A DNA stretch of 64,000 nucleotides, from positions 178,647-242,646 of the IMG/VR virus record IMGVR_UViG_3300020477_001008; one strand, given 5' to 3'. Positions 4,451 through 60,231 of the stretch are shown piece by piece. The position numbers were made by a program, and so were the translations under genes. A model generated the notes under the pieces. It did no database searches and was not told where the DNA came from. It saw nothing but the letters and a program-made list of their open reading frames with translations. Each line of letters opens with the position of its first letter. Within the stretch, counting starts at the first letter, position 1.

Positions 4451-4457
4451 ATAAATA
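4451..4457 (+). promoter_or_regulatory. T4-like late promoter box ATAAATA, 5 nt before sufS ATG
   Basis: One of at least 9 TAAATA-N5/N8-ATG instances in the window. Confidence 0.55.
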
Positions 4458-4462
4458 TTATT

Positions 4463-5668
4463 ATGCACAATATTCGAAAACAATTTCCCATATTTGATAA
4501 AACATTACCTAACGGTAAAAAATTAGTATATTTAGATAGTGCTAATTCTTCACAAAAACCGAAAAGGGTATTAGATAGATTATATGATTTTTATGCACAA
4601 GAATATAGTAGTGTTGGGAGAAGTATACACCAGTTAAGTACAGGTGCAAGTAAATGTTTAAATGATAGTAGAGAAGCAGTTGCAAAATTTTTAAATGCTG
4701 GTTCTGTAGATGAAATTGTTTTTACTAAAAGTGCCACAGAAGCTATTAATACGATTGCAGAAAGTTTTGGCAGAACTCAACGTGATCATTATGAAATAAT
4801 TTGTTCTGAATTAGAACATAATTCAAATTATCTTCCTTGGCATTTGCAAAGAGCTCATAAAAATGCAACAATTAAATTTATTCCTTTAAAAGATGATTAT
4901 ACATTAGATGTAGATAAGCTAGAAAGTTTAATTACTAAAAAAACTAAAATGATAGCAATAACTCATTTATCAAATGTTACTGGAGAAGTAATTAATGTTA
5001 AAAAAATATGTGAGATAGCACACAGTAAAGGAATAGCAGTTTTTGTAGATGGTACACAAGGTGCACCACATATGAAAGTTGATGTACAAGATATTGATTG
5101 TGATTTTTATTGTATTAGTGGTCATAAAATGTACGGACCTTCAGGCGTTGGGGCTTTGTACGCCAAAGAAAAATGGTTAGATGAATTATCGCCTTTTCAA
5201 GGTGGTGGTGGAACGGTACTTGATGCAACGCAAAGTGTTATTCAATATGCAGATGGACCAAAAAAATGGGAAGCTGGAACACACCCAGTTGCTGAAATTG
5301 TAGCATTAAAAGAAGCAATTGATTTTTATTATGATGTTGGATTTGATAATATGTTAAATCACGAAAAACAATTAGTTGAGTATTTGTATGAAAAATTAGC
5401 ATCTGATAATGATATTGAGTTACTATGTGGTAATAAGCCTAATGCTGTTTTATCATTTAATATTAAAGGAATACATCACGAAGATATGTCAATGTTTTTA
5501 GATGAATATGGTATTGCTACAAGACCAGGTCAACATTGTGCTATGTTATTCCATAAAAGGTACAGTTTAACTGGTTCTGTTAGAGTATCATTAGGTGTAT
5601 ATAATACCAAAGAAGAAATGGACTTTTTCTTACAGTCTTTGGGTGAAATTAAGAAGAGATTATCCTAA
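4463..5668 (+). CDS. sufS: Cysteine desulfurase, SufS type
   Basis: YLDSANSSQKP, DGTQG, SGHKMYGP (PLP Lys), EAGT, RPGQHCA (catalytic Cys). Confidence 0.93.
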   Translation: MHNIRKQFPIFDKTLPNGKKLVYLDSANSSQKPKRVLDRLYDFYAQEYSSVGRSIHQLSTGASKCLNDSREAVAKFLNAGSVDEIVFTKSATEAINTIAESFGRTQRDHYEIICSELEHNSNYLPWHLQRAHKNATIKFIPLKDDYTLDVDKLESLITKKTKMIAITHLSNVTGEVINVKKICEIAHSKGIAVFVDGTQGAPHMKVDVQDIDCDFYCISGHKMYGPSGVGALYAKEKWLDELSPFQGGGGTVLDATQSVIQYADGPKKWEAGTHPVAEIVALKEAIDFYYDVGFDNMLNHEKQLVEYLYEKLASDNDIELLCGNKPNAVLSFNIKGIHHEDMSMFLDEYGIATRPGQHCAMLFHKRYSLTGSVRVSLGVYNTKEEMDFFLQSLGEIKKRLS

Positions 5669-5673
5669 TCCTA

Positions 5674-5702
5674 TTGACTTCCTGATAAGTATTTTATATA
5701 AT
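5674..5702 (+). promoter_or_regulatory. Sigma70-type promoter
   Basis: TTGACT-N17-TATAAT upstream of rplL. Confidence 0.75.
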
Positions 5703-5739
5703 ACTGATGTACAATTAAATATAATTAATAAGGAAAACT

Positions 5740-6210
5740 ATGTCAGAAGATGAAGTAAAAAAAGCTGAAGAAACAAAGGCAGAAGAAAAGCCAGTAGAAC
5801 CAAAAGCTGAAGAAACATCTAAAACTATTACAAGAAATTTAGATGCTATTGTTGAAGAACTTGGACAATTAACAGTTATGGAAGCGGCCGATCTTGCTAA
5901 AAAATTAGCTAAAGCTTGGGATATTGATTTAGATAATATGGCGGCCGGTGTTGCACCAGCAGGTGGTGGCGCCGCGGGAGCTCCAGCAGACGCAGATGCT
6001 CCTGTAACAGTTATATTAAAAGATTTTAAAGAAGGTACTAAAATTAATGTCTTAAAAGCAATTAAGGCAATTAAAGGTTTAGGACTAATGGAATCTAAAC
6101 AATTTGTAGAAGCATTACCTAAAGAAGTTGATTCAGAAATACCAAGAGATAAAGCAGAAGAAATTAAAAAACAATTGGAAGAAGTTGGCGGTAACGTTGA
6201 AATAAAATAA
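5740..6210 (+). CDS. rplL: Ribosomal protein bL12 (L7/L12), divergent, with acidic N-terminal extension
   Basis: [20 protein letters not shown], Ala/Gly hinge, [41 protein letters not shown]. Confidence 0.9.
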
Positions 6211-7634
6211 TGTTAGATGAGCATAAGGTAGGAAAAGATTATAAAGAAGGCTTTACTACGGACATTGAAGCCTATACACTACCCCCTGGTCTAAATGAAG
6301 ACGTTATTAAAAAGATATCAAGTTTTAAAAAAGAACCACAATGGCTTTTAGACTGGAGACTAAAAGCTTATAAGGTTTGGCTGAATATGAAACAGCCTGA
6401 GTGGGCAAAGTTAGATATTAAGCCAATTGACTATCAAGCAATATCATATTATTCAACACCTAATCCTAAATTAAAATCTTTAGATGAATTAGATCCTAAA
6501 ATTTTAGAAACATATAATAAGTTAGGTATTCCATTACACGAACAAAAAGCATTAGCAGGTGTGGCCGTTGATGCAGTATTTGATTCTGTATCTGTAGCTA
6601 CAACGTACAAAGCAGATTTAGAAAAACAAGGTATACTTTTTTGTAGCTTTAGTGAAGCAGTAGAAAAATATCCAGAAATAGTTAAAAAATATTTAGGTAG
6701 TGTAGTACCACAAGGTGATAATTTTTTTGCTTGTTTAAATTCAGCTGTATTTACAGATGGTTCATTTGCTTATATTCCTAAAGGAGTTAGATGTCCTATG
6801 GAACTATCAACTTATTTTAGAATAAATGCGGCCAACACAGGACAATTTGAAAGAACATTAATTATATGTGAAGATGATGCATACGTATCTTATCTAGAAG
6901 GATGTACAGCACCAATGCGTGATGAAAATCAATTACACGCCGCGGTAGTTGAATTAGTAGCAAAAGAAAATGCAGAGATAAAATATTCAACAATACAAAA
7001 TTGGTATCCAGGAGATGAAGATGGAAAAGGTGGTGTATATAATTTTGTAACTAAACGTGGTAAATGTCAAGGACGTAAAAGTAAAATATCTTGGACACAA
7101 TTAGAAACAGGTTCAGCATTAACTTGGAAGTATCCTTCTTGTGTATTAATGGGAGATTATTCAGTAGGAGAGTTTTATTCAGTAGCAGTATCAACAGGTA
7201 AACAACAAGCTGATACAGGAACTAAAATGATACATTTAGGAAAACATACAAAATCAACAGTTATATCAAAAGGTATTTCAGCAAAACAAGGAAAGCAAAC
7301 TTATAGAGGATTAGTATCAATGGGTGGTAATGCTAAAAAATCACAAAACTATACTCAATGTGATTCGTTGCTTCTTGGAGATAAGTGTTCAGCACTTACT
7401 ATACCTTATATTAAAAGTAAAACAAAATCTTCTAAATGCGAACACGAAGCGTCAACATCAAAAGTATCTGATGAACAATTATTTTATTTAAGACAACGTG
7501 GACTTAAAGAAGAAGATGCTGTGAACTTAATTGTAAATGGTTTTGTAAAAGAAGTAACTAAACAGTTACCAATGGAGTTTGCAGTTGAGGCCAATAAACT
7601 TTTATCAGTAACATTAGAAGGATCAGTAGGATAA
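6210..7634 (+). CDS. sufB: Fe-S cluster assembly scaffold SufB
   Basis: [62 protein letters not shown]. Confidence 0.97.
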
Positions 7635-14033: not shown

Positions 14034-14097
14034 TTAAACCTGTAACATACTTTTTTCGTTGCATTAGTTAAAATAACACTTTATACTAAATATTATT

Positions 14098-14700
14098 ATG
14101 AATAGATCCATTTTTTCAAAATACAATATATTTCTAGAGTGGTGGTGGTTTTTCTGCTCACTTATCTTAATTTTCTTTGTACTAGGAACAGTTAACTTAT
14201 ACGAAATAGTATGGAATGCTGACCAAACTAAAATATCTTATATTATTTTAGCATTGTTTGGTGCAGTATCAGTATTTTGTGGACGCGAAGCTTGGAAACT
14301 CTCTAAACTTAAAAGAGATAACTTAGATGCTGAAGTGTCTCTTAAAACAAAATATGAGACTGGTTGGTTTGCAAGTGAGATATGTTTAACATTAGGTTTG
14401 ATTGGAACGGTAAGTGGATTTATCTTAATGTTATATGGAGCATTCTCTGATTTGAACATTTCAGATCCTCATAGTGTTCAAGAAAGTTTAGGTAAAATGA
14501 GTGTAGGGATGAGTACAGCTCTATACACGACATTAGTTGGTTTGATATGTAGTGTATTATTGAAATTACAATTTTTTAGATTAGAAATGCATTTAGACAC
14601 TTACATAAAACATAGAGCAGTTGTATACAAAGCTAGGCTTATGGAAGAAGCACAAAAACTTACGGACCAAACTAATGAATCGAGATCGTTACAAGACTAG
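14098..14700 (+). CDS. MotA/TolQ/ExbB proton-channel family protein
   Basis: Four TM segments; LGLIGTVSGFI and GMSTALYTTLVGL motifs; preceded by CTAAATA box. Confidence 0.8.
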   Translation: MNRSIFSKYNIFLEWWWFFCSLILIFFVLGTVNLYEIVWNADQTKISYIILALFGAVSVFCGREAWKLSKLKRDNLDAEVSLKTKYETGWFASEICLTLGLIGTVSGFILMLYGAFSDLNISDPHSVQESLGKMSVGMSTALYTTLVGLICSVLLKLQFFRLEMHLDTYIKHRAVVYKARLMEEAQKLTDQTNESRSLQD

Positions 14701-17726: not shown

Positions 17727-18028
17727 GTGATAAAGTAAAAGAAGAAATTATTAAAAATTTAAGAACAGTATTTGATCCAGAAATTTCTATTAACATTTAT
17801 GACCTTGGATTAATTTATAATATTGATATGAGTGAGTTACCTAAAGTAACAATTACTCATACATTAACATCAGTATTTTGCCCAGCCGCGGATCAAATTA
17901 TTGAAGATATCCAAATGGCAACTGAATCAGTAGCAGAAGTGGACCAATGTATGATTATTACTACATTTGATCCACCTTTTGGTCCAGAAATGATGAGTGA
18001 AGAAGCAAGATTAATATTAAACATTTGA
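17723..18028 (+). CDS. SufT / DUF59 Fe-S maturation protein
   Basis: LRTVFDPEISINIYDLGLIY, TLTSVFCP, FDPPF..EMMSEEARL. Confidence 0.85.
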   Translation: MSDKVKEEIIKNLRTVFDPEISINIYDLGLIYNIDMSELPKVTITHTLTSVFCPAADQIIEDIQMATESVAEVDQCMIITTFDPPFGPEMMSEEARLILNI

Positions 18029-18053
18029 CAAATTTAGGAAAGGGTAGTATTAT
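18025..18053 (+). promoter_or_regulatory. Sigma70-type promoter, 6 nt before clpP ATG (leaderless)
   Basis: TTGACA-N17-TATTAT-N6-ATG. Confidence 0.7.
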
Positions 18054-18059
18054 ATACAT

Positions 18060-18647
18060 ATGAGTAATTTAATTCCAATAGTAGTAGATCAAACTTCAAG
18101 AGGTGAAAGAAGTTATGACATCTACTCAAGACTTTTAAAAGAACGAATTGTATTTGTAACAGGTCCAATTGACGATTCAGTTTCAAGTGTAGTTTGTGCC
18201 CAATTATTATTTTTAGAATCACAAGATCCTAAAAAAGATATCTTTATGTACATTAATTCTCCAGGAGGTATTGTAACTTCTGGTTTAGCTATGTACGACA
18301 CAATGCAGTATGTAAAACCAGATATTTCAACTGTATGTATTGGACAGGCCGCTAGTGCTGGATCATTATTATTAATGGCAGGTACAAAAGGCAAAAGAAT
18401 TGCATTACCTCATAGTAAAGTAATGATACACCAACCATCAGGTGGATTTAGAGGACAAGCAACAGATATAGAGATTCACGCAAAAGATATATTAGATACT
18501 AAAGCAAGATTGAATCAACTATACGTTAAGCATACAGGGAAGGATCTTAAAACAATTGAACAAGCTATGGAAAGAGATAATTTTATGACAGCTCAACAAG
18601 CCATAGATTTTGGATTAATTGATAAGATAGAAGAAACCCGTGCTTAA
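18060..18647 (+). CDS. clpP: ATP-dependent Clp protease proteolytic subunit
   Basis: [51 protein letters not shown]. Confidence 0.98.
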
Positions 18648-19345: not shown

Positions 19346-20162
19346 TAGGTTTGAAAAGTTATATCCAAATAATTCAATTATTATGGATATGCGTAGAGCT
19401 TATATTGATAAAGATTTAAATAGTATCTTTAGAATAGTAGAAACAGATAATAAAGAAGATCTACGTAAAGTTGTTTGTGAAAGCAATTATCAAAGCTTAT
19501 GGAGATTGCTAGAAAAATATTGTAAAACAAGACTTGCTACATCATTAAAATATTTTTATAATGAAGAAATTACAATAGCAGAAGATTGCTTTAGTCAAGG
19601 TCAAGTACAAAGTAAATCTTGGTTAGTAAAAGAACTATCAAAACTTGATTTAAATTTAGGTACAGTATTTTTGTGTGCTGGATGGTATGGTACACTAGCA
19701 ACTTTAATTTTTGAAAACCATAGAATAAATGTTGATAAAATAAGAAGTTTTGATATTGATGATAGTTGTTGGAAAATTGCTGAAGTGTTTAATAAGCCTT
19801 GGGTAATGGAAGACTGGAAATTTAAAGCGTCAACAAAAGATATTATGGATTTAACTTATGATGTTGATACTTACTACACTACTAAAAAGAATGGCGATGA
19901 ACAAGAGTTAAGAGAATCACCAGATACTATTATTAATACAAGTTGTGAACATATTGCAGACTTTGATACTTGGTATAATAAAATACCAAGCGGAAAAATA
20001 GTTATATTACAATCTAATAACTATATTGGATTACCTGAACACGTAAATTGCTCTAAAACCTTAAAAGATTTTAACAATAAAACACCTATGCAAGAAGTAT
20101 TATTCCAAGGTGAACTTTACCTAGACAAGTATTCTCGCTATATGAGAATCGGCGTTAAATAA
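19320..20162 (+). CDS. Class I SAM-dependent methyltransferase-like protein
   Basis: VFLCAGWYG (motif I-like), RSFDID, IINTSCEH. Confidence 0.55.
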   Translation: MMKIHEILDRFEKLYPNNSIIMDMRRAYIDKDLNSIFRIVETDNKEDLRKVVCESNYQSLWRLLEKYCKTRLATSLKYFYNEEITIAEDCFSQGQVQSKSWLVKELSKLDLNLGTVFLCAGWYGTLATLIFENHRINVDKIRSFDIDDSCWKIAEVFNKPWVMEDWKFKASTKDIMDLTYDVDTYYTTKKNGDEQELRESPDTIINTSCEHIADFDTWYNKIPSGKIVILQSNNYIGLPEHVNCSKTLKDFNNKTPMQEVLFQGELYLDKYSRYMRIGVK

Positions 20163-20168
20163 TGTTAG

Positions 20169-21245: not shown

Positions 21246-21272
21246 TTAAATTACCAATAAATATAGTAAAAG

Positions 21273-40220: not shown

Positions 40221-40238
40221 CAAGTAAATATACTTGTT

Positions 40239-41408: not shown

Positions 41409-41432
41409 CAGATCTGGATTCTATGTTATATT
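41405..41432 (+). promoter_or_regulatory. Sigma70-type promoter, leaderless spacing
   Basis: TTGACA-N16-TATATT (extended TGn), then N6-ATG 41439. Confidence 0.6.
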
Positions 41433-41438
41433 AATAAT

Positions 41439-44798: not shown

Positions 44799-44834
44799 AA
44801 CAGATTAACCATAGTTTTTATAAATATATATGTT

Positions 44835-45077
44835 ATGAAAACTATTTGTCCTGTAATTGATATTACATATCTTATCGAGCAACGTAAGATTAAAAGAGCT
44901 ATACGTGAGCAGTTAAAGAAGCTAGAAATAGCTGATATGTTTGTTGAAGAATGTATAGTTAACTTTAAGAACGGAAAAGCAGAATATACTGGATATGTTT
45001 GGTGCAGAGAATCAGGCGAAAAAGTTCAGCTAGGTAAAACTTACGATGTAACAGAAGCATTGGCTTGGCTAGGATAA
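44835..45077 (+). CDS. Hypothetical protein
   Basis: TATAAATA (44819-44826) then N8-ATG. Confidence 0.6.
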   Translation: MKTICPVIDITYLIEQRKIKRAIREQLKKLEIADMFVEECIVNFKNGKAEYTGYVWCRESGEKVQLGKTYDVTEALAWLG

Positions 45078-45177: not shown

Positions 45178-45891
45178 ATGGCAGTAACATATAATATAAA
45201 AGGAACTACAAATAGTTCATTTAAAGTTGGGAAAAGTGGAACCGGAACGGTTTACCTTAATACTTTATCTGCCGACGATCTTTCAGCAACAGGTAATTTA
45301 ACAATATCAGGAAATCTTGTAGTATCAGGAACAACGACAACAGTAAATTCAACTACTATAGAAGTTAAAGATAGATTTATTTTTGAAGGTGCAACAACAG
45401 ATGCACACGAAACAACATTGATTGTTGAAGACCCAACAGCAGATAGAACAGTTACTATACCAAATGCTACAACAACATTAGTAGGTAGAGATACAACAGA
45501 TACGTTAACAAATAAAACATTAACAAGTCCTGTGATTACAGGTTTAAATATTTCTGATAATATTGTTTTTGAAGGTGCAACAGCAGATGCTCACGAACTG
45601 ACACTAGCAGTTGCAGATCCAACAACAGATAGAACAGTTACTATACCAGATGAAACAGGAATATTAATAGTAAAAAATACTGTAACAGGAATGATACAGT
45701 TACCTGTAGGTACAACGGCGGAAAGACCGACACCATCAGCAGGTATGCTAAGATTTAATTCAACAACAAAACGTTTTGAAGGCTATAATGGAATTAACTG
45801 GACACCATTATCATCTTCACCAAATGACTTGTCATCACGTGATGGTACAGAAGTTGATGTACACGCAAGTGACTTTGGTAACATAACGTAA
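45178..45891 (+). CDS. Virion structural / tail-fibre-like protein with duplicated module
   Basis: Two copies of FEGAT.DAHE.TL.V.DPT.DRTVTIP; LPVGTTAERP...GMLRFNSTTKRFEGYNG motif typical of myovirus fibre/baseplate proteins. Confidence 0.65.
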   Translation: MAVTYNIKGTTNSSFKVGKSGTGTVYLNTLSADDLSATGNLTISGNLVVSGTTTTVNSTTIEVKDRFIFEGATTDAHETTLIVEDPTADRTVTIPNATTTLVGRDTTDTLTNKTLTSPVITGLNISDNIVFEGATADAHELTLAVADPTTDRTVTIPDETGILIVKNTVTGMIQLPVGTTAERPTPSAGMLRFNSTTKRFEGYNGINWTPLSSSPNDLSSRDGTEVDVHASDFGNIT

Positions 45892-45912
45892 ATACACTAG
45901 GAGAATAATAAT

Positions 45913-46176
45913 ATGTGGAATATGATAAAATATGAAATACCTGAAATGTTAGACAATTGGAGAGTAATTCCAAGATTGTTAATATTTTTATATGCGGTGG
46001 TATTTTATCAAACAATGAATTGGTTTATGTTATTAGAAAATCCAAACAATGCACAGGCAGGTTTTGTATCAGTGATAGTTGGTGCAGGTGCGGCCTGGTT
46101 TGGTTTATATGTAAATTCAGGTTCAGGTAAAAAAGTAAGATTTGAAACTACAAGAACAGGAAGTAAAAGTAGCTAA
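45913..46176 (+). CDS. Two-TM membrane protein
   Basis: DNWRVIPRLL, two hydrophobic helices. Confidence 0.6.
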   Translation: MWNMIKYEIPEMLDNWRVIPRLLIFLYAVVFYQTMNWFMLLENPNNAQAGFVSVIVGAGAAWFGLYVNSGSGKKVRFETTRTGSKSS

Positions 46177-46610: not shown

Positions 46611-46962
46611 AATAATGTTAAAATTTGAATCTGAGTTGAATACTGAATCTTTGGAATCATTATTTGATACAGTTGCAACTGTTTTATCAGAAGAACTATA
46701 TGCAGAACAAAATGTTATAGGTGGAGATGGAATTGAATCCAACTATAATTTAATACATCACGAAACACACGGCTATCATTGTTATGATATGCCAATAGCC
46801 AGACCTCTTTCTATTTCAGAAAGTAAAGCACTTTACCAAGTTTTGGATAAAGCTATAACTGGAGATTATATGTTGGAAATATCAGCAGATTCTACAGAGC
46901 TACAAAACAGGTATAAATTTAATAGTTTTGAAGGTGCTATCCAAGAAGGCGATTTAGACTAG
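46603..46962 (+). CDS. Hypothetical protein
   Basis: Coupled acidic ORF. Confidence 0.6.
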   Translation: MNKIMLKFESELNTESLESLFDTVATVLSEELYAEQNVIGGDGIESNYNLIHHETHGYHCYDMPIARPLSISESKALYQVLDKAITGDYMLEISADSTELQNRYKFNSFEGAIQEGDLD

Positions 46963-46987
46963 ACATAATTTTTATTTGTGTTATACT
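46960..46987 (+). promoter_or_regulatory. Sigma70-type promoter, leaderless spacing
   Basis: TAGACA-N16-TATACT (extended TGn), then N6-ATG 46994. Confidence 0.6.
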
Positions 46988-46993
46988 AGTAGT

Positions 46994-47542
46994 ATGACAC
47001 AGCACATTATGATCGATCTGGAGACGTTAGCCACAACTATAGATGCCAATATTCTAACAATAGGTGCTATAAAGTTTGACCCCAATGAAGATTATAGTAA
47101 CTGGAAGTGGGGAGAGTATCCTAAGACGCAGGTTTTCTATAGAAGAATTGATCCTGAATCTGGATCCAAAATTGGATTGAAAAATGATGATGAAACTATT
47201 GCTTGGTGGAGTCAGCAATCAGATGAAGTTAAAGCTGAAGCATTCGCTGAAGAAGAAAGATATCCAATTGACCAAGTAATGAAAGAGTTTTATAAATTTT
47301 GTTTGCCTGGAAAATATTTTTGGGCTCAAGGTGTAGCTTTTGATACTGTAATATGTGAACAAGTATTTAAAAAATTAAAACGTGGTGCTCCTTGGATGTT
47401 TTATAATTTACGTGATACTAGAACATTATTTGATTTAAAAGATCCAAATATGCCAAGTGCTAGACACCATCACGCATTATTTGATTGTTGGAGACAAATT
47501 GTAGGGGTACAAAATGTTTATAGACAAATCTACAAAAATTAA
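46994..47542 (+). CDS. DEDDh 3'-5' exonuclease
   Basis: IMIDLETL, QGVAFD, RDTRTL, HHALFD. Confidence 0.8.
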   Translation: MTQHIMIDLETLATTIDANILTIGAIKFDPNEDYSNWKWGEYPKTQVFYRRIDPESGSKIGLKNDDETIAWWSQQSDEVKAEAFAEEERYPIDQVMKEFYKFCLPGKYFWAQGVAFDTVICEQVFKKLKRGAPWMFYNLRDTRTLFDLKDPNMPSARHHHALFDCWRQIVGVQNVYRQIYKN

Positions 47543-48602: not shown

Positions 48603-48634
48603 CACAGAGCTAGGTACAGATAAATATTTGTGTT

Positions 48635-50209
48635 ATGAGAGCAACGCATTTAAATACGGCAGTTTTTGCATTTGGAAGGTTTAATCCACCTACAATTGGT
48701 CACGGTAGATTGGTAGAAGTTGTTAAAAAACAGCCAGGAACACCTTTCTTATTTTTAACTCATACGCAAAAACCAAAAACAGATCCATTAACATTTGAGC
48801 AAAAAGTAAAGTATGCTAAAGCTAGTTTTACTAATATTAAAATTGGTGATAGTTCTGTAAGAACATTAATACAAGCTTTACAAAAACTAGAGTCTTTAGG
48901 ATTCTTAAATGTAATAATGGTTGCTGGAGATGATAGACTACAACAGTTTACAGACTTTTTACCAAAGTACAATGGTAAAGATTATAGTTTTGAAAGTGTT
49001 AAAGTTGTTAGTGCTGGAGAAAGAGATCCAGATTCAGATGGTGCTATAGGTATGTCAGCAAGTAAAATGAAAGCTATGGCAGTTGCCGGTGACTTTAAAG
49101 GATTTCAAAAAGGAACTATTAATCCTGATATAGCAAAAAGTATGTATGATGATGTAAGAGCAGGTATGGGAATTACCGAAATTAAAGAAGCACAATATCC
49201 AATGCCAAAAGTTTATGTTGATATGGATGGTGTGTTAGCAGACTTCTTTACAGCTTTAGCAAAATTTAGAGGAGTTGACCATTGGAAAGATGGCGGCCAC
49301 GATAGTGTACAAGATTCAATTGAAGCAATTCAAGGAACAGATTTCTTTTCAACATTACCAGTATTCAATACCGCACCAAATATTATTAATAGTGTAAAAG
49401 CATTTACTGGTGGCGAATGGTATATTAATTCATCTCCATTAAGAGGAGATCACGAAAATTCTACAAAGCATAAATTAGATTGGCTTAAGAAGAATAATTT
49501 TGATCCAACAGATGTTGTTATAACAGGAAGAAAAGAATCGTATGCAATTAATAAACAAACAAATCAACCAAACATATTAATTGATGATAAGCCATCTAAT
49601 TTAGAAAGATGGACATCTAAAGGTGGTATTGGAATTAGATATCAAGCAACACAAGATAATCCAATGAGAGTACAAAAAGGTTTAGAAGTAATTAAAAATT
49701 ATTTAGAAAAAAATAATGGATTAATAGATCCTAAAGATGTTGCTGAATTAAATAAAGCAATTGATACAGGACAACTAATGGAGAATGGTGGAAAAATTAT
49801 TCCAGGTGTTAATACTACTCACGATGTTGGTCCTAATGAAATAAAAATACAAGCAAAGAAAATGGGATTTACAGTTAGTAAAGATGGAGTACCACCAATT
49901 ATGAAACCAAAAAATTTAAGAGAATATATTAAACTTATTGAAGAAAGAGATACAAGAGAATTGAAATTTCAAAATAGAGATGGAAAATATTCTATGTTGA
50001 GTTTACCAGGAACACAAAAATGGCAAAAAGATAAAAAGACTGCAGAACCAGGAACAGACAAATGGTTTAAAACTTGGAAAACATTACCATATTTAACTAA
50101 AGGTAGAAAGAATCATTATATGCTACCTATAAAAGAAAAGTTAAATGAGTTAGAAAATTTATTAAAAGAATACGGAGTTATTAAAAATGAAAATAAAAGA
50201 GATAGCTAA
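48635..50209 (+). CDS. Nucleotidyltransferase (cytidylyl/NMN adenylyltransferase-like) fused to HAD 5'-nucleotidase and extra modules
   Basis: FGRFNPPTIGH...SAGERDPD...MSASKMK, then VYVDMDGVLADF...ILIDD...GGIGI; ATAAATA-N8-ATG. Confidence 0.8.
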   Translation: MRATHLNTAVFAFGRFNPPTIGHGRLVEVVKKQPGTPFLFLTHTQKPKTDPLTFEQKVKYAKASFTNIKIGDSSVRTLIQALQKLESLGFLNVIMVAGDDRLQQFTDFLPKYNGKDYSFESVKVVSAGERDPDSDGAIGMSASKMKAMAVAGDFKGFQKGTINPDIAKSMYDDVRAGMGITEIKEAQYPMPKVYVDMDGVLADFFTALAKFRGVDHWKDGGHDSVQDSIEAIQGTDFFSTLPVFNTAPNIINSVKAFTGGEWYINSSPLRGDHENSTKHKLDWLKKNNFDPTDVVITGRKESYAINKQTNQPNILIDDKPSNLERWTSKGGIGIRYQATQDNPMRVQKGLEVIKNYLEKNNGLIDPKDVAELNKAIDTGQLMENGGKIIPGVNTTHDVGPNEIKIQAKKMGFTVSKDGVPPIMKPKNLREYIKLIEERDTRELKFQNRDGKYSMLSLPGTQKWQKDKKTAEPGTDKWFKTWKTLPYLTKGRKNHYMLPIKEKLNELENLLKEYGVIKNENKRDS

Positions 50210-52761: not shown

Positions 52762-52988
52762 TTGATTGGGATAGACATAAAAGACCACAGTATGAACCAC
52801 CAAGTTGGATTGAGTGGCAACCAACTAATCCTATGAAATATTTGTTTATGCTTTGTCTTGTTCTTTGGATACTTCCAGTTTTATTTGGATTAATTTTAAC
52901 ACCCTTAGGTGCAATAGTTAATATTTTATTTGTTGATTGGGTTATGTATAAAAGAGATACTTCTTTTTTAAACCGTGATCGTGATTAA
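52758..52988 (+). CDS. Small membrane protein
   Basis: Two hydrophobic segments. Confidence 0.55.
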   Translation: MIDWDRHKRPQYEPPSWIEWQPTNPMKYLFMLCLVLWILPVLFGLILTPLGAIVNILFVDWVMYKRDTSFLNRDRD

Positions 52989-52996
52989 ATATTATT

Positions 52997-53542
52997 ATGC
53001 ACAAAGAATATTTTTTTCATATACCTAAACTAGATTTAAATGATGAACAAAGGTCTATATTACATAAAAAATATCTAGTTTCTAAAATTACACATAAAGG
53101 TTATAATAAAAATACGCATCAATATCTTAAAACATTTCATACTGAAATTGATGTTTTAAAAGACATTTATTCAAGTAAAATAATTAAGCAAATAGAAGAT
53201 TTATGTGAAGGATTACCTATAGATAAATTTAATAGACACACGTCATACGAATTTTTAAAAACAGAAGGTAAAGTTGAAATACATAGAGATCCTGTACGTT
53301 TAGCAGTTTTAGTTATTCCTTTGTTTAGTAAAGAAAACAATAAATTAGAATTTTGGAATGAAGAAGAAACAAAAATTGTTAATGAATTAGATTATGGTAC
53401 TAAAACCTATATAATGAGAACTCGTGTGCCTCATAGTGTATCAACTAGTAAAAAACCAAGGGTTTTTTGGCAGGGAAGTATTTTTACAAGAGATTTTGAT
53501 GAAGTGTTAAAAGATTATCGTCAAGGACGACTTTTTAAATAA
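52997..53542 (+). CDS. Cupin / 2OG-Fe(II) oxygenase-like protein
   Basis: IHRDPVR...PHSV...PRV; TTAAATA-N5-ATG. Confidence 0.5.
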   Translation: MHKEYFFHIPKLDLNDEQRSILHKKYLVSKITHKGYNKNTHQYLKTFHTEIDVLKDIYSSKIIKQIEDLCEGLPIDKFNRHTSYEFLKTEGKVEIHRDPVRLAVLVIPLFSKENNKLEFWNEEETKIVNELDYGTKTYIMRTRVPHSVSTSKKPRVFWQGSIFTRDFDEVLKDYRQGRLFK

Positions 53543-53550
53543 ATATTGTT

Positions 53551-53754
53551 ATGATAGAATGGATAAAAAAATTGTTCGCATCGCAGACTTACGAACTAAT
53601 TATAGAGCATTTAGGAACAGTAAAAAATTATACAGTTACTAAGGTTTATACATTAAATGATCGTACTGCTCATTTTAAAGCAATAGATGGCGAAAAATAT
53701 ACATTAAGAAGTGCTGATAAAATGAGTTGGTCTTTAAGAAAGATTACAAAATGA
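53551..53754 (+). CDS. Hypothetical protein
   Basis: ATAAATA-N5-ATG. Confidence 0.6.
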   Translation: MIEWIKKLFASQTYELIIEHLGTVKNYTVTKVYTLNDRTAHFKAIDGEKYTLRSADKMSWSLRKITK

Positions 53755-53951: not shown

Positions 53952-53974
53952 AATAAACACTAAATACAGCTATT

Positions 53975-54475
53975 ATGCGTTATTCGGAAATAATTAATGA
54001 GTCAATGAGCTTTTCAGCAGGACATTCTGAGAAAAGAGAAGACGGAAACTACTGGATAAGCGACACAGATTCAGGTGATAGATATGCTCCAGAATTTTAT
54101 AAGAATATGGACAAGTATTCTAAAGATCTTGATTTAGAGCCACCTGAAAACCCAGATTATAAAGAAGAATTAGATTTATCATTATCAAACGCAAGTATGC
54201 GTGAAGTATTTCACGAATTAGGATATCCTACAGATTTAGAGGACAGAGCACCTTTTCCAATAGATGAATTTATTGGTAGAACTACACAATGGTTACAAAA
54301 AGCAATTGGCAAGCCATCTCCAGAGCAAAAACCAGAAATAGTTAAACAACCATATGGGGCTACAATGATTAGTGGTGGCAAACCAGAAGGATATTTTAAT
54401 AGAGTTATCAAAAGAATGAATGAGATTGCTAGAGCTGGGAAACAAAATGGTGCAACTCACGTGTGGGCAAGTTAG
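53975..54475 (+). CDS. Hypothetical protein with capsid-targeting-like leader
   Basis: MRYSEIINE; CTAAATA-N8-ATG. Confidence 0.65.
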   Translation: MRYSEIINESMSFSAGHSEKREDGNYWISDTDSGDRYAPEFYKNMDKYSKDLDLEPPENPDYKEELDLSLSNASMREVFHELGYPTDLEDRAPFPIDEFIGRTTQWLQKAIGKPSPEQKPEIVKQPYGATMISGGKPEGYFNRVIKRMNEIARAGKQNGATHVWAS

Positions 54476-54487
54476 GTAAATATTACT

Positions 54488-56500
54488 ATGAGACTTACAA
54501 AACTTTTTGAAGCATTAGATAAACAAGCTAAAAAGCCAAATCCAATGGCTAAAGCATTATCAGATCCTAAATTTAAGCCAAAAACAGAAACAGATAAAAA
54601 GAAAGAAGCTAAAAAAGGTTATCAAAAGCATAAAGGTAAGATAGATGAAGCAGGCTACGAAGGACAAGTAGAGCCAACACACCACGATTTTAAAAATGTA
54701 AATTTAGATTCAATTAAAAAAATTATAGCTGATAGAGATTTATCAGCAGATGCTGAAGAAGTAGATGGTGCTATTAGAGTACACACATATGATACTGATA
54801 GAAAATCAGTAGCAAAATCATTAGGAATCAATGAAGAACTTTATATTAATGGTATGAAAGATGTTGAAGATGTTATTAATATGATTAAAGACACACTTGA
54901 TGATGGTCAAATTGATAGTGCTAAAGATTATTTAGAACAGTTTAAAGAATATCTACACTCAAAAGGAATTACAGATTCAGTTGATCCTATTAGACACGAT
55001 CAAGATGCTAAAGAAGAACTTGCAAAAGAAATTTATGCTAACAATGAATATTACCAAAGTGAGTATGAAGATTGGGAAGCATTTATGAATTCAGATGATT
55101 TTGAAGAAGAAAATATGAGACTATGGAGTAAGTTTGGTGAATCAAAAATTAAACCATATGTGTCTATGTATAATGATAAAGACACAGGTAAGATGACGTA
55201 TGACGTATTAGATAGCGATGGAAAATCAGCATTTAAAACTAAAGACAAGAAAGCGGCTATGGGTTTCTTTAATAAAAACTTTGATGCTTTAAGAAAAGGT
55301 TTTGATTCATTAAAAGATGAAAATGTTTCAGCTATAGCTAAAGCAATAAATTCAGCTTATGATCCAACTTTTGGAGATACTGATAATAGATTTATGAAAA
55401 CTGTAAAAAAATTAAATCCTTTTAAAAGTGATGAATATAAAAAATTGCAAATGGCAAAACAAGCTGAAAGAGATAATCCAAATTGGAAAGGTGAGCCTGG
55501 CGACCAAGCTGGTGAAACTTTACCAAATGGAAGAAGAGCATATTACAGAAATGTAAATGGACAGAAGCAAAGAGTAGATATTTACAAAGACATATATCCA
55601 AGTGAAGCAGTTGCAGAATTTGATGGTCCAGATGAAACTAAAGATAATGCAGACTTTACAGATAAAGAAATTAAAATGGCGTTTGGTGTTTTAAATGATC
55701 CAAGATTTAAAGGTGGTAATTACAGTGGTGCTGTTAATGTTATTAATAAAATTGCACCAGGTTTAGCAGATCACCCATCAGTAGCAAATGCTTTAAAAAG
55801 AACAAATGAAAATTTAACTGAAGATCAAATGACAGATGAAGTTAAAGCAATATTAGACAAACACGGTATTAAAAGTACAGACGATATTGAATATGGTGGA
55901 GAAGCTTTTAGTGATTTATTTGATTATTTCTCAAGTGATCCTGATGAAATGCCATATGGTGTTCAAAAAGCAAGAACAGGAATGCCAGATGAATGGATTG
56001 CAAATAGAATTTTAGATTTAGGTTTACTTAAAGAAGTAGAGCCACAAATGAATCCAGAACCTAATAGACCACAACCTACTACTCCACAAAGAGGACCAGA
56101 TGATACAAGATTAAAAACAAATGTTTCTTTACAACAAATTGCTAACTTATTTCCTGGAATAGAAGATAAGCAAACATTTTTACAATCATTGTTAAGATTA
56201 AAGCAAGGGCAAAAAATTTCAATGCAACACGCATATACTTTAGCTAATGCATTTAAAGAATTAATTTCAAAAGATCCACAAGACACACAAAGAGCAATGA
56301 TACAATTAAAAAAAATCGGAGCTCAAGAGTCAATAAACGAAACTAAAGAAGATGATGCACCTGGTTATCCACACCAATATAAAACTATGAATCAAGGTAA
56401 GACGCCAGAAGAAGCATTACAAGATGAAAGAATTGAAGATAGTAAAGAATTAGAACGAATTCAAATGTTAGCAGGGTTATTTCATAGCGAGAAGGAATAA
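54488..56500 (+). CDS. Large modular putative head-internal polyprotein
   Basis: MRLTKLFE leader; unrelated short modules separated by (I/L/V)xE sites; ends ELERIQMLAGL. Confidence 0.65.
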   Translation: MRLTKLFEALDKQAKKPNPMAKALSDPKFKPKTETDKKKEAKKGYQKHKGKIDEAGYEGQVEPTHHDFKNVNLDSIKKIIADRDLSADAEEVDGAIRVHTYDTDRKSVAKSLGINEELYINGMKDVEDVINMIKDTLDDGQIDSAKDYLEQFKEYLHSKGITDSVDPIRHDQDAKEELAKEIYANNEYYQSEYEDWEAFMNSDDFEEENMRLWSKFGESKIKPYVSMYNDKDTGKMTYDVLDSDGKSAFKTKDKKAAMGFFNKNFDALRKGFDSLKDENVSAIAKAINSAYDPTFGDTDNRFMKTVKKLNPFKSDEYKKLQMAKQAERDNPNWKGEPGDQAGETLPNGRRAYYRNVNGQKQRVDIYKDIYPSEAVAEFDGPDETKDNADFTDKEIKMAFGVLNDPRFKGGNYSGAVNVINKIAPGLADHPSVANALKRTNENLTEDQMTDEVKAILDKHGIKSTDDIEYGGEAFSDLFDYFSSDPDEMPYGVQKARTGMPDEWIANRILDLGLLKEVEPQMNPEPNRPQPTTPQRGPDDTRLKTNVSLQQIANLFPGIEDKQTFLQSLLRLKQGQKISMQHAYTLANAFKELISKDPQDTQRAMIQLKKIGAQESINETKEDDAPGYPHQYKTMNQGKTPEEALQDERIEDSKELERIQMLAGLFHSEKE

Positions 56501-56503
56501 GCT

Positions 56504-58740: not shown

Positions 58741-58750
58741 ATTAACTTAT

Positions 58751-58826: not shown

Positions 58827-58837
58827 GGCTACCACAT

Positions 58838-58913
58838 TCCTCGGTAGCTCAGTTGGTAGAGCAGTTGACTGTTAATCAATTGGTCGCAGGTTCGAGTCCT
58901 GCCCGAGGAGCCA
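58838..58913 (+). tRNA. tRNA-Asn (GTT)
   Basis: TCCTCGG/CCGAGGA, GTTGA CT GTT AA TCAAT, CCA. Confidence 0.97.
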
Positions 58914-58926
58914 AAAAGGATTAACA

Positions 58927-59232
58927 ATGACACTGACTATTAATGTTATAGATAGAGACGGAAATAATCATAAAATTGAAACATTTGAAGGCCAATCTAT
59001 AGCTCAAGCAATTGTTCAACATATAAAACCAAGTGAATTTATGATATGTGGAGGTTGTTGTGCTTGTGGTACGTGTGCTGTTGATATTGATAAAAAAGGC
59101 GAACTACCTGAAATGGATGTTGATGAAGATGCATTATTAGATACAGTAGATGATAGAAATCCTAATAGTAGATTAAGTTGCCAAGTACCAATGACTAAAG
59201 AGCTTGATGGAGTTACAGTAAAGATAATATGA
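58927..59232 (+). CDS. fdx: [2Fe-2S] ferredoxin, adrenodoxin/Fdx type
   Basis: CGGCCACGTC...EDALLD...SRLSCQ. Confidence 0.9.
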   Translation: MTLTINVIDRDGNNHKIETFEGQSIAQAIVQHIKPSEFMICGGCCACGTCAVDIDKKGELPEMDVDEDALLDTVDDRNPNSRLSCQVPMTKELDGVTVKII

Positions 59233-59969
59233 TAAAATCATTTACGGTATTTGCACCACAACGTTCCGGAACCAATTACACAGAACATCTTATAACTCAA
59301 AATTTTAAAAATATACATTGTCATTTACCTATGAATGAGTATGCGTGGAAGCACGAACCTAGTGCAAAAAGAATTTATGGAAATTATAAAGAGCATAGAA
59401 AAGAATTAAGACAACATTTACATTTACTTGTAACAAAATATGTTTATAAATGGATTGAAAGTATACAACGGAATGCAGTTGATATTGTTATAAGAAGACC
59501 TGAACTATTAGATATTTCATATTGTAGTTCACACGAAAAATTAAAAACAGAAAACAATATGCAAGTACCAATATCTTGGGTAGTTGGTGAAATAAATTTA
59601 ATTGAACTTGTAAAATTATGGAATGAATTTTATAATAATTGGTTAGAAATGGGACCAAAGTTTAAGCATTGGGGAATAGTAAAGTATGAAAGTCTATTAG
59701 TAAGAGAGTTAAGGCAAAATTTTTTACAAGCTATGCAAAAAACTTATGGATTAGAAAAAGTTAACTTAACTGGCTGGAATTTACCAGTAGCAGTACCAAT
59801 GTCTCCAAGATGGAATAAATCTTTAGCAATAGTTAAGAGCAGAGATTATTCAGATTTAAGTAGATGTTATAAATTAACACAAAATCAAATAGATATTATA
59901 GATACGTTAGTAGACAAAGATTTGCTAGACAAATTAGGATACCCTACAGAAAAACCTATATCCAATTGA
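59229..59969 (+). CDS. Sulfotransferase-fold protein
   Basis: APQRSGTN (5'-PSB loop), KH, VTKYVYKWIES (3'-PB-like), VKYESL. Confidence 0.6.
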   Translation: MIKSFTVFAPQRSGTNYTEHLITQNFKNIHCHLPMNEYAWKHEPSAKRIYGNYKEHRKELRQHLHLLVTKYVYKWIESIQRNAVDIVIRRPELLDISYCSSHEKLKTENNMQVPISWVVGEINLIELVKLWNEFYNNWLEMGPKFKHWGIVKYESLLVRELRQNFLQAMQKTYGLEKVNLTGWNLPVAVPMSPRWNKSLAIVKSRDYSDLSRCYKLTQNQIDIIDTLVDKDLLDKLGYPTEKPISN

Positions 59970-59994
59970 CACATTATACTTTATAGTATATAAT
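59966..59994 (+). promoter_or_regulatory. Perfect sigma70 promoter, leaderless spacing
   Basis: TTGACA-N17-TATAAT-N6-ATG 60001. Confidence 0.8.
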
Positions 59995-60000
59995 CTTAAT

Positions 60001-60231
60001 ATGACAGAATTTACTAATGGAATATTTAAAGTAGTTGCCGGTACTAGTATAGGCCGTGCGTTAATTTATACACTTGGTCATATTATAATTGCAATGACAG
60101 TTGTAAGTTTAGTTACGGGTGCTAGTTTATGGGAAGCGGGGTTAGTTGCTTTAATAGAGCCTACTATAAATGGTTGTTGGTATTATTGTCTTGATAAATT
60201 ATGTACAAAGTACATAAGACAAAGTACATAA
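60001..60231 (+). CDS. DUF2061-like small membrane protein
   Basis: RALIYTLGHIIIAMTV...ALIEP.ING.WYY.LDK. Confidence 0.6.
   Translation: MTEFTNGIFKVVAGTSIGRALIYTLGHIIIAMTVVSLVTGASLWEAGLVALIEPTINGCWYYCLDKLCTKYIRQST

What the first reader, a model, noticed from the sequence alone, without database searches (positions are those of the whole stretch)
4451..60003. Pervasive leaderless architecture: promoter boxes at fixed short distances from ATG with no SD
Seen: TAAATA-N5-ATG at 4463, 14098, 52997, 53551 and 54488 (spacers TTATT, TTATT, TTATT, TTGTT, TTACT). TAAATA-N8-ATG at 40239, 44835, 48635 and 53975 (spacers ending TGTT/TATT). Four sigma70 promoters have exactly 6 nt from -10 to ATG (18060, 41439, 46994, 60001). 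Known: T4 late promoters are a TATAAATA -10-only element; transcription starts about 6-7 nt after a -10 box; IF3 disfavours and IF2 favours leaderless initiation. Inference: many early and late mRNAs begin at or within 1-3 nt of AUG, and phage IF3/bS21 may tune leaderless versus SD-led translation.
Basis: partly seen in the sequence, partly recalled or inferred. Interest (0 to 1): 0.75.

Follow-up and report, generated by a model that had tools for sequence, protein, structure and literature searches.

The report
Phage promoters fused to start codons
A huge marine T4-related phage places its late (TAAATA) promoters and some host-type promoters so close to ATG that about one gene in six should be made from mRNAs with no ribosome-binding leader; a cultured SAR11 phage has the same layout, so it can be tested.

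Summary
All 13 quoted sites exist as written. The window is part of a 242.6-kb marine virus contig. Across that contig, TAAATA five bases before ATG is the commonest hexamer-and-spacing pair before gene starts (19 of 294; simulated mean 0.8, max 4).

The element is a promoter, not a ribosome site:
- Its full form is TAAATA-N4-T-R, and the T-R stays fixed to the box rather than to the ATG. N8 sites therefore give 3-nt leaders.
- The same motif sits 13-40 nt upstream of genes with normal Shine-Dalgarno sequences.
- TAAATA is depleted on both strands.
- There is no -35 element.
- The geometry matches T4 late promoters (box at -13 to -6).
- The phage encodes a gp55-like late sigma factor.

TTGACA/TATAAT promoters show two spacing classes: -10 to ATG of 5-8 nt, or 21-37 nt with an SD.

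The layout is conserved in uncultured relatives (TerL 56-95% identity) and in Pelagibacter phage HTVC008M. It is absent from T4, PA5oct and two cyanophages.

No transcription start was mapped; the metatranscriptome contigs were uninformative.

The IF3/bS21 idea is not supported. Both genes are real, but relatives carrying them (bS21 in PA5oct, the whole module in Atu_ph07) mostly use SD-led genes.

This is a new variant of known kinds: the T4 late promoter and leaderless phage mRNAs as in φYS40.

The parts
4452..4465 (+). Late-type promoter TAAATA (4452-4457) + TTAT-T + ATG 4463. Predicted leaderless start of a NifS/IscS-like cysteine desulfurase gene (4463-5668). It lies 8 nt after tRNA-Asp.
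14087..14100 (+). TAAATA-N5-ATG. Predicted leaderless start of a MotA/ExbB-like gene (14098-14700).
20156..20171 (+). TAAATA-atgt-TA-g-ATG (N7, predicted 2-nt leader). Radical-SAM gene 20169-21245.
21258..21275 (+). TAAATA-N9-ATG, with positions 5-6 = AA rather than T-R (weaker candidate). Radical-SAM gene 21273-22745.
40225..40241 (+). TAAATA-tact-TG-tt-ATG (N8). Predicted +1 = G and a 3-nt leader. Radical-SAM gene 40239-41408.
44821..44837 (+). TAAATA-tata-TG-tt-ATG (N8, predicted 3-nt leader). 80-aa gene 44835-45077.
48621..48637 (+). TAAATA-tttg-TG-tt-ATG (N8, predicted 3-nt leader). Cytidyltransferase/deoxyribonucleotidase-like gene 48635-50209. The start codon is confirmed by N-terminal conservation (MRAT.LN) in relatives that lack this promoter.
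52986..52999 (+). TAAATA-N5-ATG. The TAA of the box is also the stop codon of the upstream ORF. Gene 52997-53542.
53540..53553 (+). TAAATA-N5-ATG. The TAA of the box is also the stop codon of the upstream gene. Gene 53551-53754.
53961..53977 (+). TAAATA-cagc-TA-tt-ATG (N8, predicted 3-nt leader). Gene 53975-54475.
54477..54490 (+). TAAATA-N5-ATG. 670-aa gene 54488-56500.
18025..18062 (+). Sigma70-type promoter TTGACA-N17-TATTAT-N6-ATG. Predicted leaderless start of a ClpP-like/prohead protease gene (18060-18647).
41405..41441 (+). TTGACA-N16-TATATT-N6-ATG. Predicted leaderless gene 41439-42086.
46960..46996 (+). TAGACA-N16-TATACT-N6-ATG. Predicted leaderless exonuclease-like gene 46994-47542.
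59966..60003 (+). TTGACA-N17-TATAAT-N6-ATG (perfect consensus). Predicted leaderless 76-aa gene 60001-60231.
5716..5742 (+). The same late motif with a leader: TAAATA-taat-TA-ataaggaaaact-ATG. Predicted 13-nt leader carrying an AAGGA SD. Gene 5740-6210.
45889..45915 (+). Late motif with a leader: TAAATA-cact-AG-gagaataataat-ATG. The SD (AGGAG) sits at the predicted 5' end. Gene 45913-46176.
1615..3807 (+). Apparent ClpX (1615-2907) - IF3 (2904-3458) - bS21 (3451-3807) operon: the translation genes named in the finding. A TTGCAA-N16-TATAAT-N8-ATG candidate promoter (3415-3453) lies before bS21.

Best explanation
**What the phage is.** The window belongs to a large marine phage of the T4 superfamily. 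The contig is 242.6 kb and estimated about 55% complete. Its nearest cultured relatives by terminase are PA5oct, Atu_ph07 and Rak2-like phages.

**Two promoter types.**
- Host-type promoters: TTGACA-N16-18-TAnnnT.
- A -10-only late-type promoter, TAAATA-N4-T-R. It is most likely read by host RNA polymerase core carrying the phage's gp55-like sigma factor.

**Late-type promoters.**
- Taking the T4 geometry (box ending at -6), transcription would start at the purine 6 nt after the box.
- In about half of these promoters that purine is the A of the ATG (N5).
- In a further set it lies 1-3 nt upstream of the ATG (N6-N8).
- The resulting mRNA has no, or almost no, 5' leader and no Shine-Dalgarno sequence.
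- The other late promoters start 12-25 nt upstream, often exactly at an AGGAG-type SD.

**Host-type promoters.** About 12-17 place the -10 hexamer 5-8 nt (mostly 6) before ATG, with the same consequence.

**Translation.** The first cistron of each such transcript would be translated by the leaderless route, in which a 5'-terminal AUG is bound by a ribosome carrying fMet-tRNA. Downstream cistrons use an SD or coupling.

**Shown here:** motif, spacing, statistics, conservation, the sigma-factor homologue, and SD depletion.

**Inferred:** the exact 5' ends, which polymerase holoenzyme reads the box, and the translation mode.
For: - **Sites and enrichment.** The sites are real and the enrichment is extreme.
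- **Start dinucleotide.** T at position 5 and a purine at position 6 after the box occur in 19/19 N5 sites, 9/9 N8 sites and 19/31 intergenic sites with 10-60 nt leaders. They occur in only 20/137 intragenic sites (P = 3e-7 and 2e-7). The start dinucleotide is therefore tied to the box, not to the ATG.
- **Leadered copies.** The leadered copies sit before canonical GGAG-type SDs.
- **No upstream element.** The logo shows no -35 or other upstream conservation.
- **Depletion.** TAAATA is 2.3-2.7-fold depleted, and about equally on sense and antisense strands inside genes. This is expected for a DNA-level signal.
- **T4 geometry.** The T4 late box spans -13 to -6, so N5 puts +1 on the A of ATG.
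- **Sigma factor.** A gp55-family late sigma factor is encoded at contig 83009-83878 (phrog_12791 E = 3e-87; T4 gp55 family phrog_234 E = 2e-24).
- **Downstream genes.** They include portal, large terminase and virion proteins.
- **SD depletion.** SD-like 4-mers occur in 3/54 leaderless-class genes against 128/240 others.
- **Start codon.** After the box at N5, ATG opens 20 long ORFs, GTG 1 and TTG 0.
- **Host-type spacing.** The sigma70-type spacing is bimodal: N5-8, or N21-37 with an SD.
- **Conservation at terL.** terL keeps (A)TAAATA or TAAGTA-N4-T-ATG across relatives of 56-95% TerL identity while the flanks diverge. One subclade has switched to the same box plus an approximately 17-22-nt leader.
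- **N5 peak in relatives.** The N5 peak dominates in the relatives' loci.
- **Density of TAAATA-N4-TATG, sites per 100 kb:**

| Genome | Density |
|---|---|
| This contig | 9.5 |
| Relative G001 | 8.4 |
| Relative G002 | 10.3 |
| HTVC008M | 6.1 |
| T4, PA5oct, Syn9, P-SSM2, Vibrio phage 2.275.O | at control level |

- **HTVC008M.** It has 12 gene starts at N5, and 5 of 5 checked coincide with annotated starts.
- **True start codon.** N-terminal conservation confirms the ATGs of terL and of gene 48635 as true starts.
Against: - No transcription start site was observed.
- Metatranscriptome contigs from the source sample run across three predicted starts: 52887-53050, 53924-54234 and 54463-54638. 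So transcripts, or contaminating DNA, that include the promoter region exist. Contig ends there coincide with strain-variant breakpoints and say nothing about 5' ends.
- Seven of 39 sites use the TAA of the box as the upstream stop codon, and many lie within 0-12 nt of the upstream gene. Read-through mRNAs must therefore also carry these ATGs without an SD.
- The clamp (gp45 family) was not found, and gp33 was not searched, in this roughly 55%-complete contig.
- Some downstream genes are metabolic rather than classical late genes: RNR beta, radical SAM, cysteine desulfurase.
- The host is unknown.
- 5'-end folding is only marginally weaker than in other genes (P = 0.03).
Confidence: 0.78

Rival explanations
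1. TAAATA is an mRNA-level translation signal: an AU-rich, non-SD ribosome-binding element sitting 5-8 nt before AUG inside polycistronic mRNAs. It might be read by ribosomes carrying the phage bS21. On this view it is not a promoter.
For: - The box occupies the position where an SD normally sits.
- Many sites are 0-12 nt from the upstream gene's end.
- RNA contigs span three of the sites.
- The phage encodes bS21 and IF3.
Against: - T-R is fixed relative to the box, not the ATG, in the N8 class.
- The identical motif lies 13-40 nt upstream of genes with their own canonical SD.
- Depletion is equal on antisense strands.
- There is an exact match to T4 late-promoter geometry, and a gp55 homologue is present.
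- Thirteen of 39 sites lie more than 30 nt from any upstream ORF, for example behind tRNA genes.
- bS21-bearing relatives lack the layout.
Confidence: 0.1
2. The box is read by a phage-encoded, non-canonical RNA polymerase, as in phiKZ. The phiKZ late promoters carry TATG. On this view the reader is not the host core with a gp55-like sigma factor.
For: - N5 sites read T-ATG, resembling the phiKZ late TATG motif.
- Only about 55% of the genome is in hand, so polymerase genes could lie in the missing part.
Against: - No RNA polymerase domain was found: Rpb1 domain 2 and T7-type families gave no hits, although the T7-type search rang in no control genome.
- The phage is T4-superfamily by terminase and encodes gp55.
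- N8 and leadered sites have T-R, not TATG.
- phiKZ starts at the G, and an early-infection dRNA-seq map of phiKZ found no leaderless transcripts.
Confidence: 0.05
3. The pattern is a by-product of AT-rich intergenic composition, of stop codons (TAA), or of mis-called start codons. No special architecture exists.
For: - The genome is 31% G+C.
- Seven sites share TAA with an upstream stop.
- My gene calls are home-made.
Against: - Simulations and same-composition hexamers give nothing similar.
- The reversed-pattern control gives 2 against 23.
- The analysis did not depend on gene calls, only on the first ATG of long ORFs.
- Starts were confirmed by N-terminal conservation and by the GenBank annotation of HTVC008M.
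Confidence: 0.02

Closest known systems
Bacteriophage T4 late promoters (TATAAATA; gp55 sigma, gp33 co-activator, gp45 clamp)
   Same: - A -10-only AT-rich box with no -35 element.
- The box ends at -6, so the start is 6 nt downstream.
- A gp55-family sigma factor is encoded.
- Structural genes lie downstream.
   Different: - Only the TAAATA core is invariant; the first two T4 positions are free. T(-1) and purine(+1) are invariant.
- In T4 the box-N4-TATG arrangement is at chance level: 3 sites against 2 in the reversed control in 169 kb. Late mRNAs there carry SD leaders (established knowledge).
- Here about half of the boxes abut the ATG.
- gp45 was not found and gp33 was not searched in this partial contig.
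Thermus phage φYS40 (Sevostyanova et al. 2007) leaderless middle/late transcripts
   Same: A large phage most of whose middle/late mRNAs lack a leader. The effect is linked in the literature to the IF2/IF3 balance.
   Different: - The host belongs to the Deinococcus-Thermus phylum, where a -10 element abutting the ORF is a common host expression mode.
- φYS40 is reported to alter host IF2/IF3 expression, not to encode IF3.
- Here the promoter is of the T4 gp55 type and the host is an unknown marine bacterium.
Pelagibacter phage HTVC008M (cultured T4-like phage of SAR11, NC_020484)
   Same: - The same (A)TAAATA-N5-ATG peak: 12 gene starts.
- All nine TAAATA-N4-TATG matches lie on the coding strand, and 5 of 5 checked are annotated starts, four of them structural genes.
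- It encodes gp55, gp33, gp45 and bS21.
   Different: - A different family (Kyanoviridae), 147 kb.
- T(-1) is less strict.
- No annotated IF3.
- Only distantly related proteins: bS21 33% and gp55 core 29% identity.
- I found no paper describing the layout in it.
Jumbo phages PA5oct and Atu_ph07 (nearest cultured relatives by terminase, 50-54% identity)
   Same: - T4-superfamily terminase.
- ATAAATA boxes lie upstream of PA5oct structural genes.
- bS21 is in both. The ClpX-IF3 neighbourhood is in Atu_ph07, whose IF3 is 37% identical.
   Different: - PA5oct's boxes sit 15-25 nt upstream of AGGAG-type SDs, and only one clear N5 case was seen.
- TAAATA-N4-TATG is at control level in PA5oct and marginal in Atu_ph07.
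phiKZ/AR9 non-virion RNA polymerase late promoters (TATG; AACA-N6-TA/G)
   Same: A short motif ending in T-purine at the start site.
   Different: - Those phages encode their own multisubunit polymerases.
- AR9 5' UTRs are 26-491 nt.
- An early-infection dRNA-seq map of phiKZ found no leaderless transcripts.
- No polymerase genes were found here.

Membership tests
T4-type late promoter (gp55-dependent) | An AT-rich TATAAATA-like box placed at -13 to -6, about one helical turn before the start | tested here: inconclusive
   The TAAATA core (-11 to -6) is invariant, and the spacing to the predicted +1 matches T4. Positions -13/-12 are not conserved. The real +1 was not mapped.
T4-type late promoter (gp55-dependent) | No conserved -35 element | tested here: met
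   A logo of 30 sites shows no conservation upstream of the box.
T4-type late promoter (gp55-dependent) | The phage encodes a gp55-family sigma factor | tested here: met
   Contig 83009-83878: phrog_12791 E = 2.6e-87 and phrog_234 (the T4 gp55 family) E = 2.1e-24. It is 29% identical to HTVC008M gp55 over the core.
T4-type late promoter (gp55-dependent) | gp45 sliding clamp (activator) and gp33 co-activator encoded | tested here: inconclusive
   The gp45 family (phrog_223) was not found in this roughly 55%-complete contig. gp33 was not searched.
T4-type late promoter (gp55-dependent) | Drives late (virion and packaging) genes | tested here: met
   Portal, large terminase and virion structural proteins lie downstream. 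So do RNR beta, radical-SAM and other metabolic genes.
Leaderless mRNA | The primary transcript starts at, or within a few nt of, the start codon | not testable with these tools
   Only assembled metatranscriptome contigs were available. They cross three sites and carry no 5'-end information.
Leaderless mRNA | No Shine-Dalgarno sequence before the start codon | tested here: met
   An SD-like 4-mer is present in 3/54 against 128/240 other genes, P = 7e-12.
Leaderless mRNA | AUG, rather than GUG or UUG, at the 5' end | tested here: met
   TAAATA-N5 followed by a long ORF: ATG 20, GTG 1, TTG 0.
Sigma70-type promoter | TTGACA-like -35 and TATAAT-like -10 hexamers 16-18 bp apart | tested here: met
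   The four window sites have 0-2 mismatches in all. Activity was not tested.
Bacterial IF3 / bS21 (the phage copies) | IF3_N plus IF3_C domains; Ribosomal_S21 domain | tested here: met
   Pfam IF3_N 93 bits, IF3_C 69 bits, S21 42 bits, all above cut-off. The IF3 aligns along most of a solved 180-residue IF3 chain.

The most novel reading that the evidence does not exclude
Lineages of marine T4-superfamily phages have moved their gp55-type late promoters onto the start codons. They include this huge phage, its uncultured relatives and the cultured SAR11 phage HTVC008M. Late infection would then run largely on leaderless mRNAs. Phage-encoded ribosome parts (bS21, here also IF3) would then be part of a regime that shifts initiation between SD-led and leaderless messages. 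If so, the old question of why phages carry bS21 becomes testable in a culturable system.
Probability: 0.15. Interest if true: 0.85.

Novelty: new variant of a known kind. Interest (0 to 1): 0.6.

Why it matters
T4-type late promoters and leaderless phage mRNAs are each well known. I found no description of gp55-type promoters fused to start codons in the literature I could search.

If the 5' ends are confirmed, three things follow.
- A widespread group of ocean phages makes much of its late proteome, including portal and terminase, without Shine-Dalgarno-guided initiation.
- Gene callers that expect an RBS will mis-set starts in these genomes.
- The motif TAAATA-N4-T-ATG becomes a cheap marker of true start codons and of late operons.

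The same layout is in HTVC008M, which grows on a cultured SAR11 strain. So the prediction can be tested directly, and the role of phage bS21 can be examined alongside it.

Tried and rejected
- **blastn against GenBank phages.** No match for a 3.8-kb window stretch.
- **Pfam searches of the contig.** Sigma70 region 2, RNA polymerase Rpb1 domain 2 and T7-type polymerase gave no hits. The T7-type search rang in no control, so it is uninformative.
- **Metatranscriptome check.** Three RNA runs hold patchy contigs over 52.9-55.8 kb and none over 50.2-52.8 kb in the best run. Contigs cross three predicted starts, and their ends coincide with strain-variant breakpoints. I treat this as inconclusive, neither support nor refutation.
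- **Host inference from IF3.** The nearest cellular IF3s are only 35-45% identical and mostly Bacteroidota or CPR. The search is word-biased towards AT-rich genomes. The phage's TTGACA/TATAAT promoters and GGAGG SDs do not fit Bacteroidota, so I left the host open.
- **Stop-codon or translational-coupling artefact.** Rejected: only 7 of 39 sites share TAA with an upstream stop.
- **phiKZ/AR9-like promoter reading.** Considered because of 'TATG' and rejected.
- **Orthologues of gene 48635.** Relatives lack the box, so promoter positions turn over. This confirmed the start codon but gave no test of N8 conservation.
- **5'-end folding.** The difference between leaderless-class genes and the rest is marginal (P = 0.03).
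- **The φYS40 primary paper (PMC1885378).** Not held. I cite it only through a review.

Full report
**What the sequence is**

The window is the last 64 kb of a single 242,646-bp virus contig from IMG/VR. The contig is linear and CheckV estimates it at 55% complete. Its DNA is held by many marine metagenome runs.

The contig is 31% G+C, and nearly all genes in the window lie on the + strand. The large terminase is of the T4 superfamily. The best cultured matches are PA5oct (54% identity), Atu_ph07 (50%) and Rak2-like jumbo phages (45%). No close relative is in GenBank phages at the DNA level.

**Check of the observation**

Every one of the 13 sites is present as written. I tested the pattern on the whole contig in ways that do not rely on gene calls.

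- TAAATA occurs only 225 times on both strands. Hexamers of the same composition occur 476-956 times. Expectation from its sub-words is 511-598.
- Twenty-four of the 225 have ATG exactly five bases downstream, and 13 have it eight bases downstream. Of these, 19 and 9 are the first ATG of an ORF of at least 60 codons.
- I tabulated all 4096 hexamers at 40 spacings upstream of 294 gene starts. TAAATA at N5 is the single most frequent entry (19), ahead of any Shine-Dalgarno hexamer. Simulated upstream regions give a mean of 0.79 and at most 4.
- For TTGACA-N16-18-TAnnnT sites, the distance from the -10 hexamer to the gene's ATG is bimodal. One spike is at 5-8 nt (seven at exactly 6, P about 6e-5). 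A broad group lies at 21-37 nt and carries AGGAG or AGAGAGG-type SDs.

**Promoter or ribosome site?**

The box sits where an SD normally would, so this was the main rival. Four results decide for a promoter.

1. The full motif is TAAATA-N4-T-R.
   - T at position 5 and a purine at position 6 after the box are invariant in all 19 N5 sites. There the purine is the A of ATG.
   - They are also invariant in all 9 N8 sites, where the purine lies three bases before the ATG.
   - The dinucleotide is therefore fixed to the box, not to the start codon.
2. The same TAAATA-N4-T-R occurs in 19 of 31 intergenic sites that lie 10-60 nt upstream of genes.
   - Many of these run straight into a canonical SD, for example TAAATA-gaaa-TA-GGAGcaactaata-ATG.
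   - It occurs in only 20 of 137 intragenic copies, P = 3e-7.
3. TAAATA is depleted about equally on the sense and antisense strands of genes (66 and 76 copies). This fits a DNA-level signal.
4. There is no conservation upstream of the box.

The review of T4 late transcription places the TATAAATA box with its first base at -13, hence its last at -6. Five bases between box and ATG therefore put +1 on the A.

The contig encodes a gp55-family late sigma factor at 83009-83878. Genes behind the box include the portal, the large terminase and virion proteins. They also include RNR beta, radical-SAM enzymes and a cysteine desulfurase.

**Consequences for translation**

Of 294 gene starts:

| Class | Number |
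|---|---|
| TAAATA box 5-9 nt upstream | 37 |
| Sigma70-type -10 hexamer 5-8 nt upstream | about 17 |
| SD-like motif | 129 |
| Neither (many overlap the upstream stop) | 111 |

Source.

- The leaderless class almost never has an SD-like 4-mer: 3 of 54 against 128 of 240, P = 7e-12.
- It uses ATG: 20 long ORFs, against 1 for GTG and 0 for TTG at the same spacing.
- So SD-led initiation is normal in this phage. The leaderless design applies to promoter-proximal genes, roughly half of the recognisable promoters.
- Only 7 of 39 sites reuse the TAA of the box as the upstream stop, so translational coupling does not explain the motif.

**Comparative evidence**

*terL in 80 IMG/VR relatives (TerL 56-95% identity)*
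- The terL start keeps (A)TAAATA, or the variant TAAGTA, followed by N4-T-ATG in most lineages, while the flanks diverge.
- One subclade has the same box plus T-A and an approximately 17-22-nt leader.
- Close relatives also keep a second, tandem box 12 nt upstream.
- Pooled over these loci, the N5 peak is overwhelming: 52 of 170 and 106 of 631 boxes. A second broad peak lies at N17-28. These counts are not independent, since orthologous sites recur.

*Density of TAAATA-N4-TATG*

| Genome | Sites per 100 kb | Note |
|---|---|---|
| This contig | 9.5 | reversed control 2 against 23 |
| Relative G001 | 8.4 | |
| Relative G002 | 10.3 | |
| Relative G003 | 4.3 | at control level |
| T4 | | at control level |
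| PA5oct | | at control level |
| Syn9, P-SSM2, Vibrio phage 2.275.O | | at control level |
| Atu_ph07 | | marginal |
| HTVC008M | 6.1 | nine matches, all on the coding strand |

*HTVC008M and PA5oct*
- Pelagibacter phage HTVC008M has 12 gene starts at N5. Five of five checked are annotated starts, four of them structural genes.
- In PA5oct, ATAAATA boxes lie 15-25 nt upstream of AGGAG SDs, with only one clear N5 case.

*Promoter turnover*
- Orthologues of window gene 48635 lack the box but keep the same N-terminus. This confirms the start codon.

**RNA evidence**

Three metatranscriptome runs contain pieces of window 52.9-55.8 kb. They are stored only as assembled contigs. Three contigs run across predicted starts. 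Contig ends coincide with strain-variant breakpoints seen in the DNA run. This shows that the region is present in RNA libraries and that read-through RNA (or DNA carry-over) exists. It neither supports nor refutes the predicted 5' ends.

**IF3 and bS21**

- The window encodes, in an apparent operon:
  - ClpX at 1615-2907;
  - a two-domain IF3 at 2904-3458, which aligns along most of a solved 180-residue IF3 chain;
  - a 118-aa bS21 at 3451-3807.
- Atu_ph07 has the same ClpX-IF3 neighbourhood, with an IF3 37% identical, and has bS21 nearby across the origin of its circular map. PA5oct and G003 also carry bS21.
- Those phages show no more than marginal enrichment of the leaderless layout.
- HTVC008M has the layout with bS21 but no annotated IF3.
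[quoted passage not shown] 2001, as cited).
- I therefore see no support for a dedicated link. Only biochemistry can settle it.

**Comparison with the known**

- The promoter behaves like a T4 late promoter with a shortened core. Membership is likely but not proven, because the start site, gp33 and gp45 are unconfirmed.
- Leaderless late expression has a precedent in Thermus phage φYS40, whose host phylum uses this mode widely.
- AR9 has 5' UTRs of 26-491 nt, and an early-infection map of phiKZ found no leaderless transcripts.
- Full-text searches combining leaderless with T4-like, gp55, late promoter, cyanophage or huge phages found no description of this layout.
- I class it as a new variant of a known kind.

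**Verdict**

- The leaderless reading is well supported but indirect (confidence 0.78).
- The IF3/bS21 reading is not supported.

Noticed in passing
window 1615-3807; Atu_ph07 (NC_042013) 244-2066 and 489120-489257: A ClpX-IF3-bS21 gene cluster is shared between this marine phage and the cultured Agrobacterium jumbo phage Atu_ph07 (IF3 37% identical). bS21 is also in PA5oct and in relative G003. It looks like a lineage trait of this jumbo-phage group.
   Followed up: partly
window 20169-36973, 40239-41408 and 4463-5668: There is a run of about ten paralogous radical-SAM genes (360-575 aa each), with one more at 40239 and further similar genes elsewhere in the contig. A NifS/IscS-like cysteine desulfurase lies at 4463. 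This is an unusually large Fe-S / radical-SAM investment for a phage. Its function is unknown.
   Followed up: partly
window 36965-37004, 58712-58751, 63589-63628: Three tRNA units (Glu, Thr, Gly) each have a TTGAnn-N17-TAnnnT promoter. In each, the -10 hexamer ends exactly 10 nt before the mature tRNA 5' end. The precursors would therefore carry only about 3-4 nt of 5' leader.
   Followed up: no
Pelagibacter phage HTVC008M, NC_020484 (loci L182-L184): This cultured SAR11 phage shows the same (A)TAAATA-N5-ATG peak. It has 12 such gene starts, for example gp019, gp026, gp027, gp053 and gp063. It encodes gp55, gp33, gp45, RegA and bS21.
   Followed up: yes
contig 137288-137313 (outside the window; locus L008 about 4288-4313): terL has two tandem TAAATA-N4-TA boxes 12 nt apart. 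One gives a 12-nt leader and one gives none. Both are conserved in relatives L013-L025.
   Followed up: partly
contig 83009-83878 (locus L005 7009-7878): The gp55-like late sigma gene is 289 aa, against 185 aa in T4. It sits itself behind a TTGACC...TATAAT-N5-ATG leaderless-type host promoter.
   Followed up: partly
contig 10-25 kb (locus L001/L002): A dense block of about 15 strong promoters of the form GGTTGACA-N16-TAnnnT lies here. Each has a 22-35-nt leader and an AGAGAGG or GGAGG SD before a small gene. It is probably the early region. Two promoters in the block (23619, 25133) are the leaderless N6 type.
   Followed up: no
contig 57689-69874 (- strand): A 4061-aa ORF is followed downstream by an 839-aa gene (55161-57680) that starts at TAAATA-N5-ATG and has structural-protein and tail-protein matches.
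   Followed up: no
window about 50048-55960: The DNA run from the likely source sample holds several variant contigs that break at 50122, 52883, 54254-54307 and 55602. So closely related strains of this phage co-occur in the sample.
   Followed up: no
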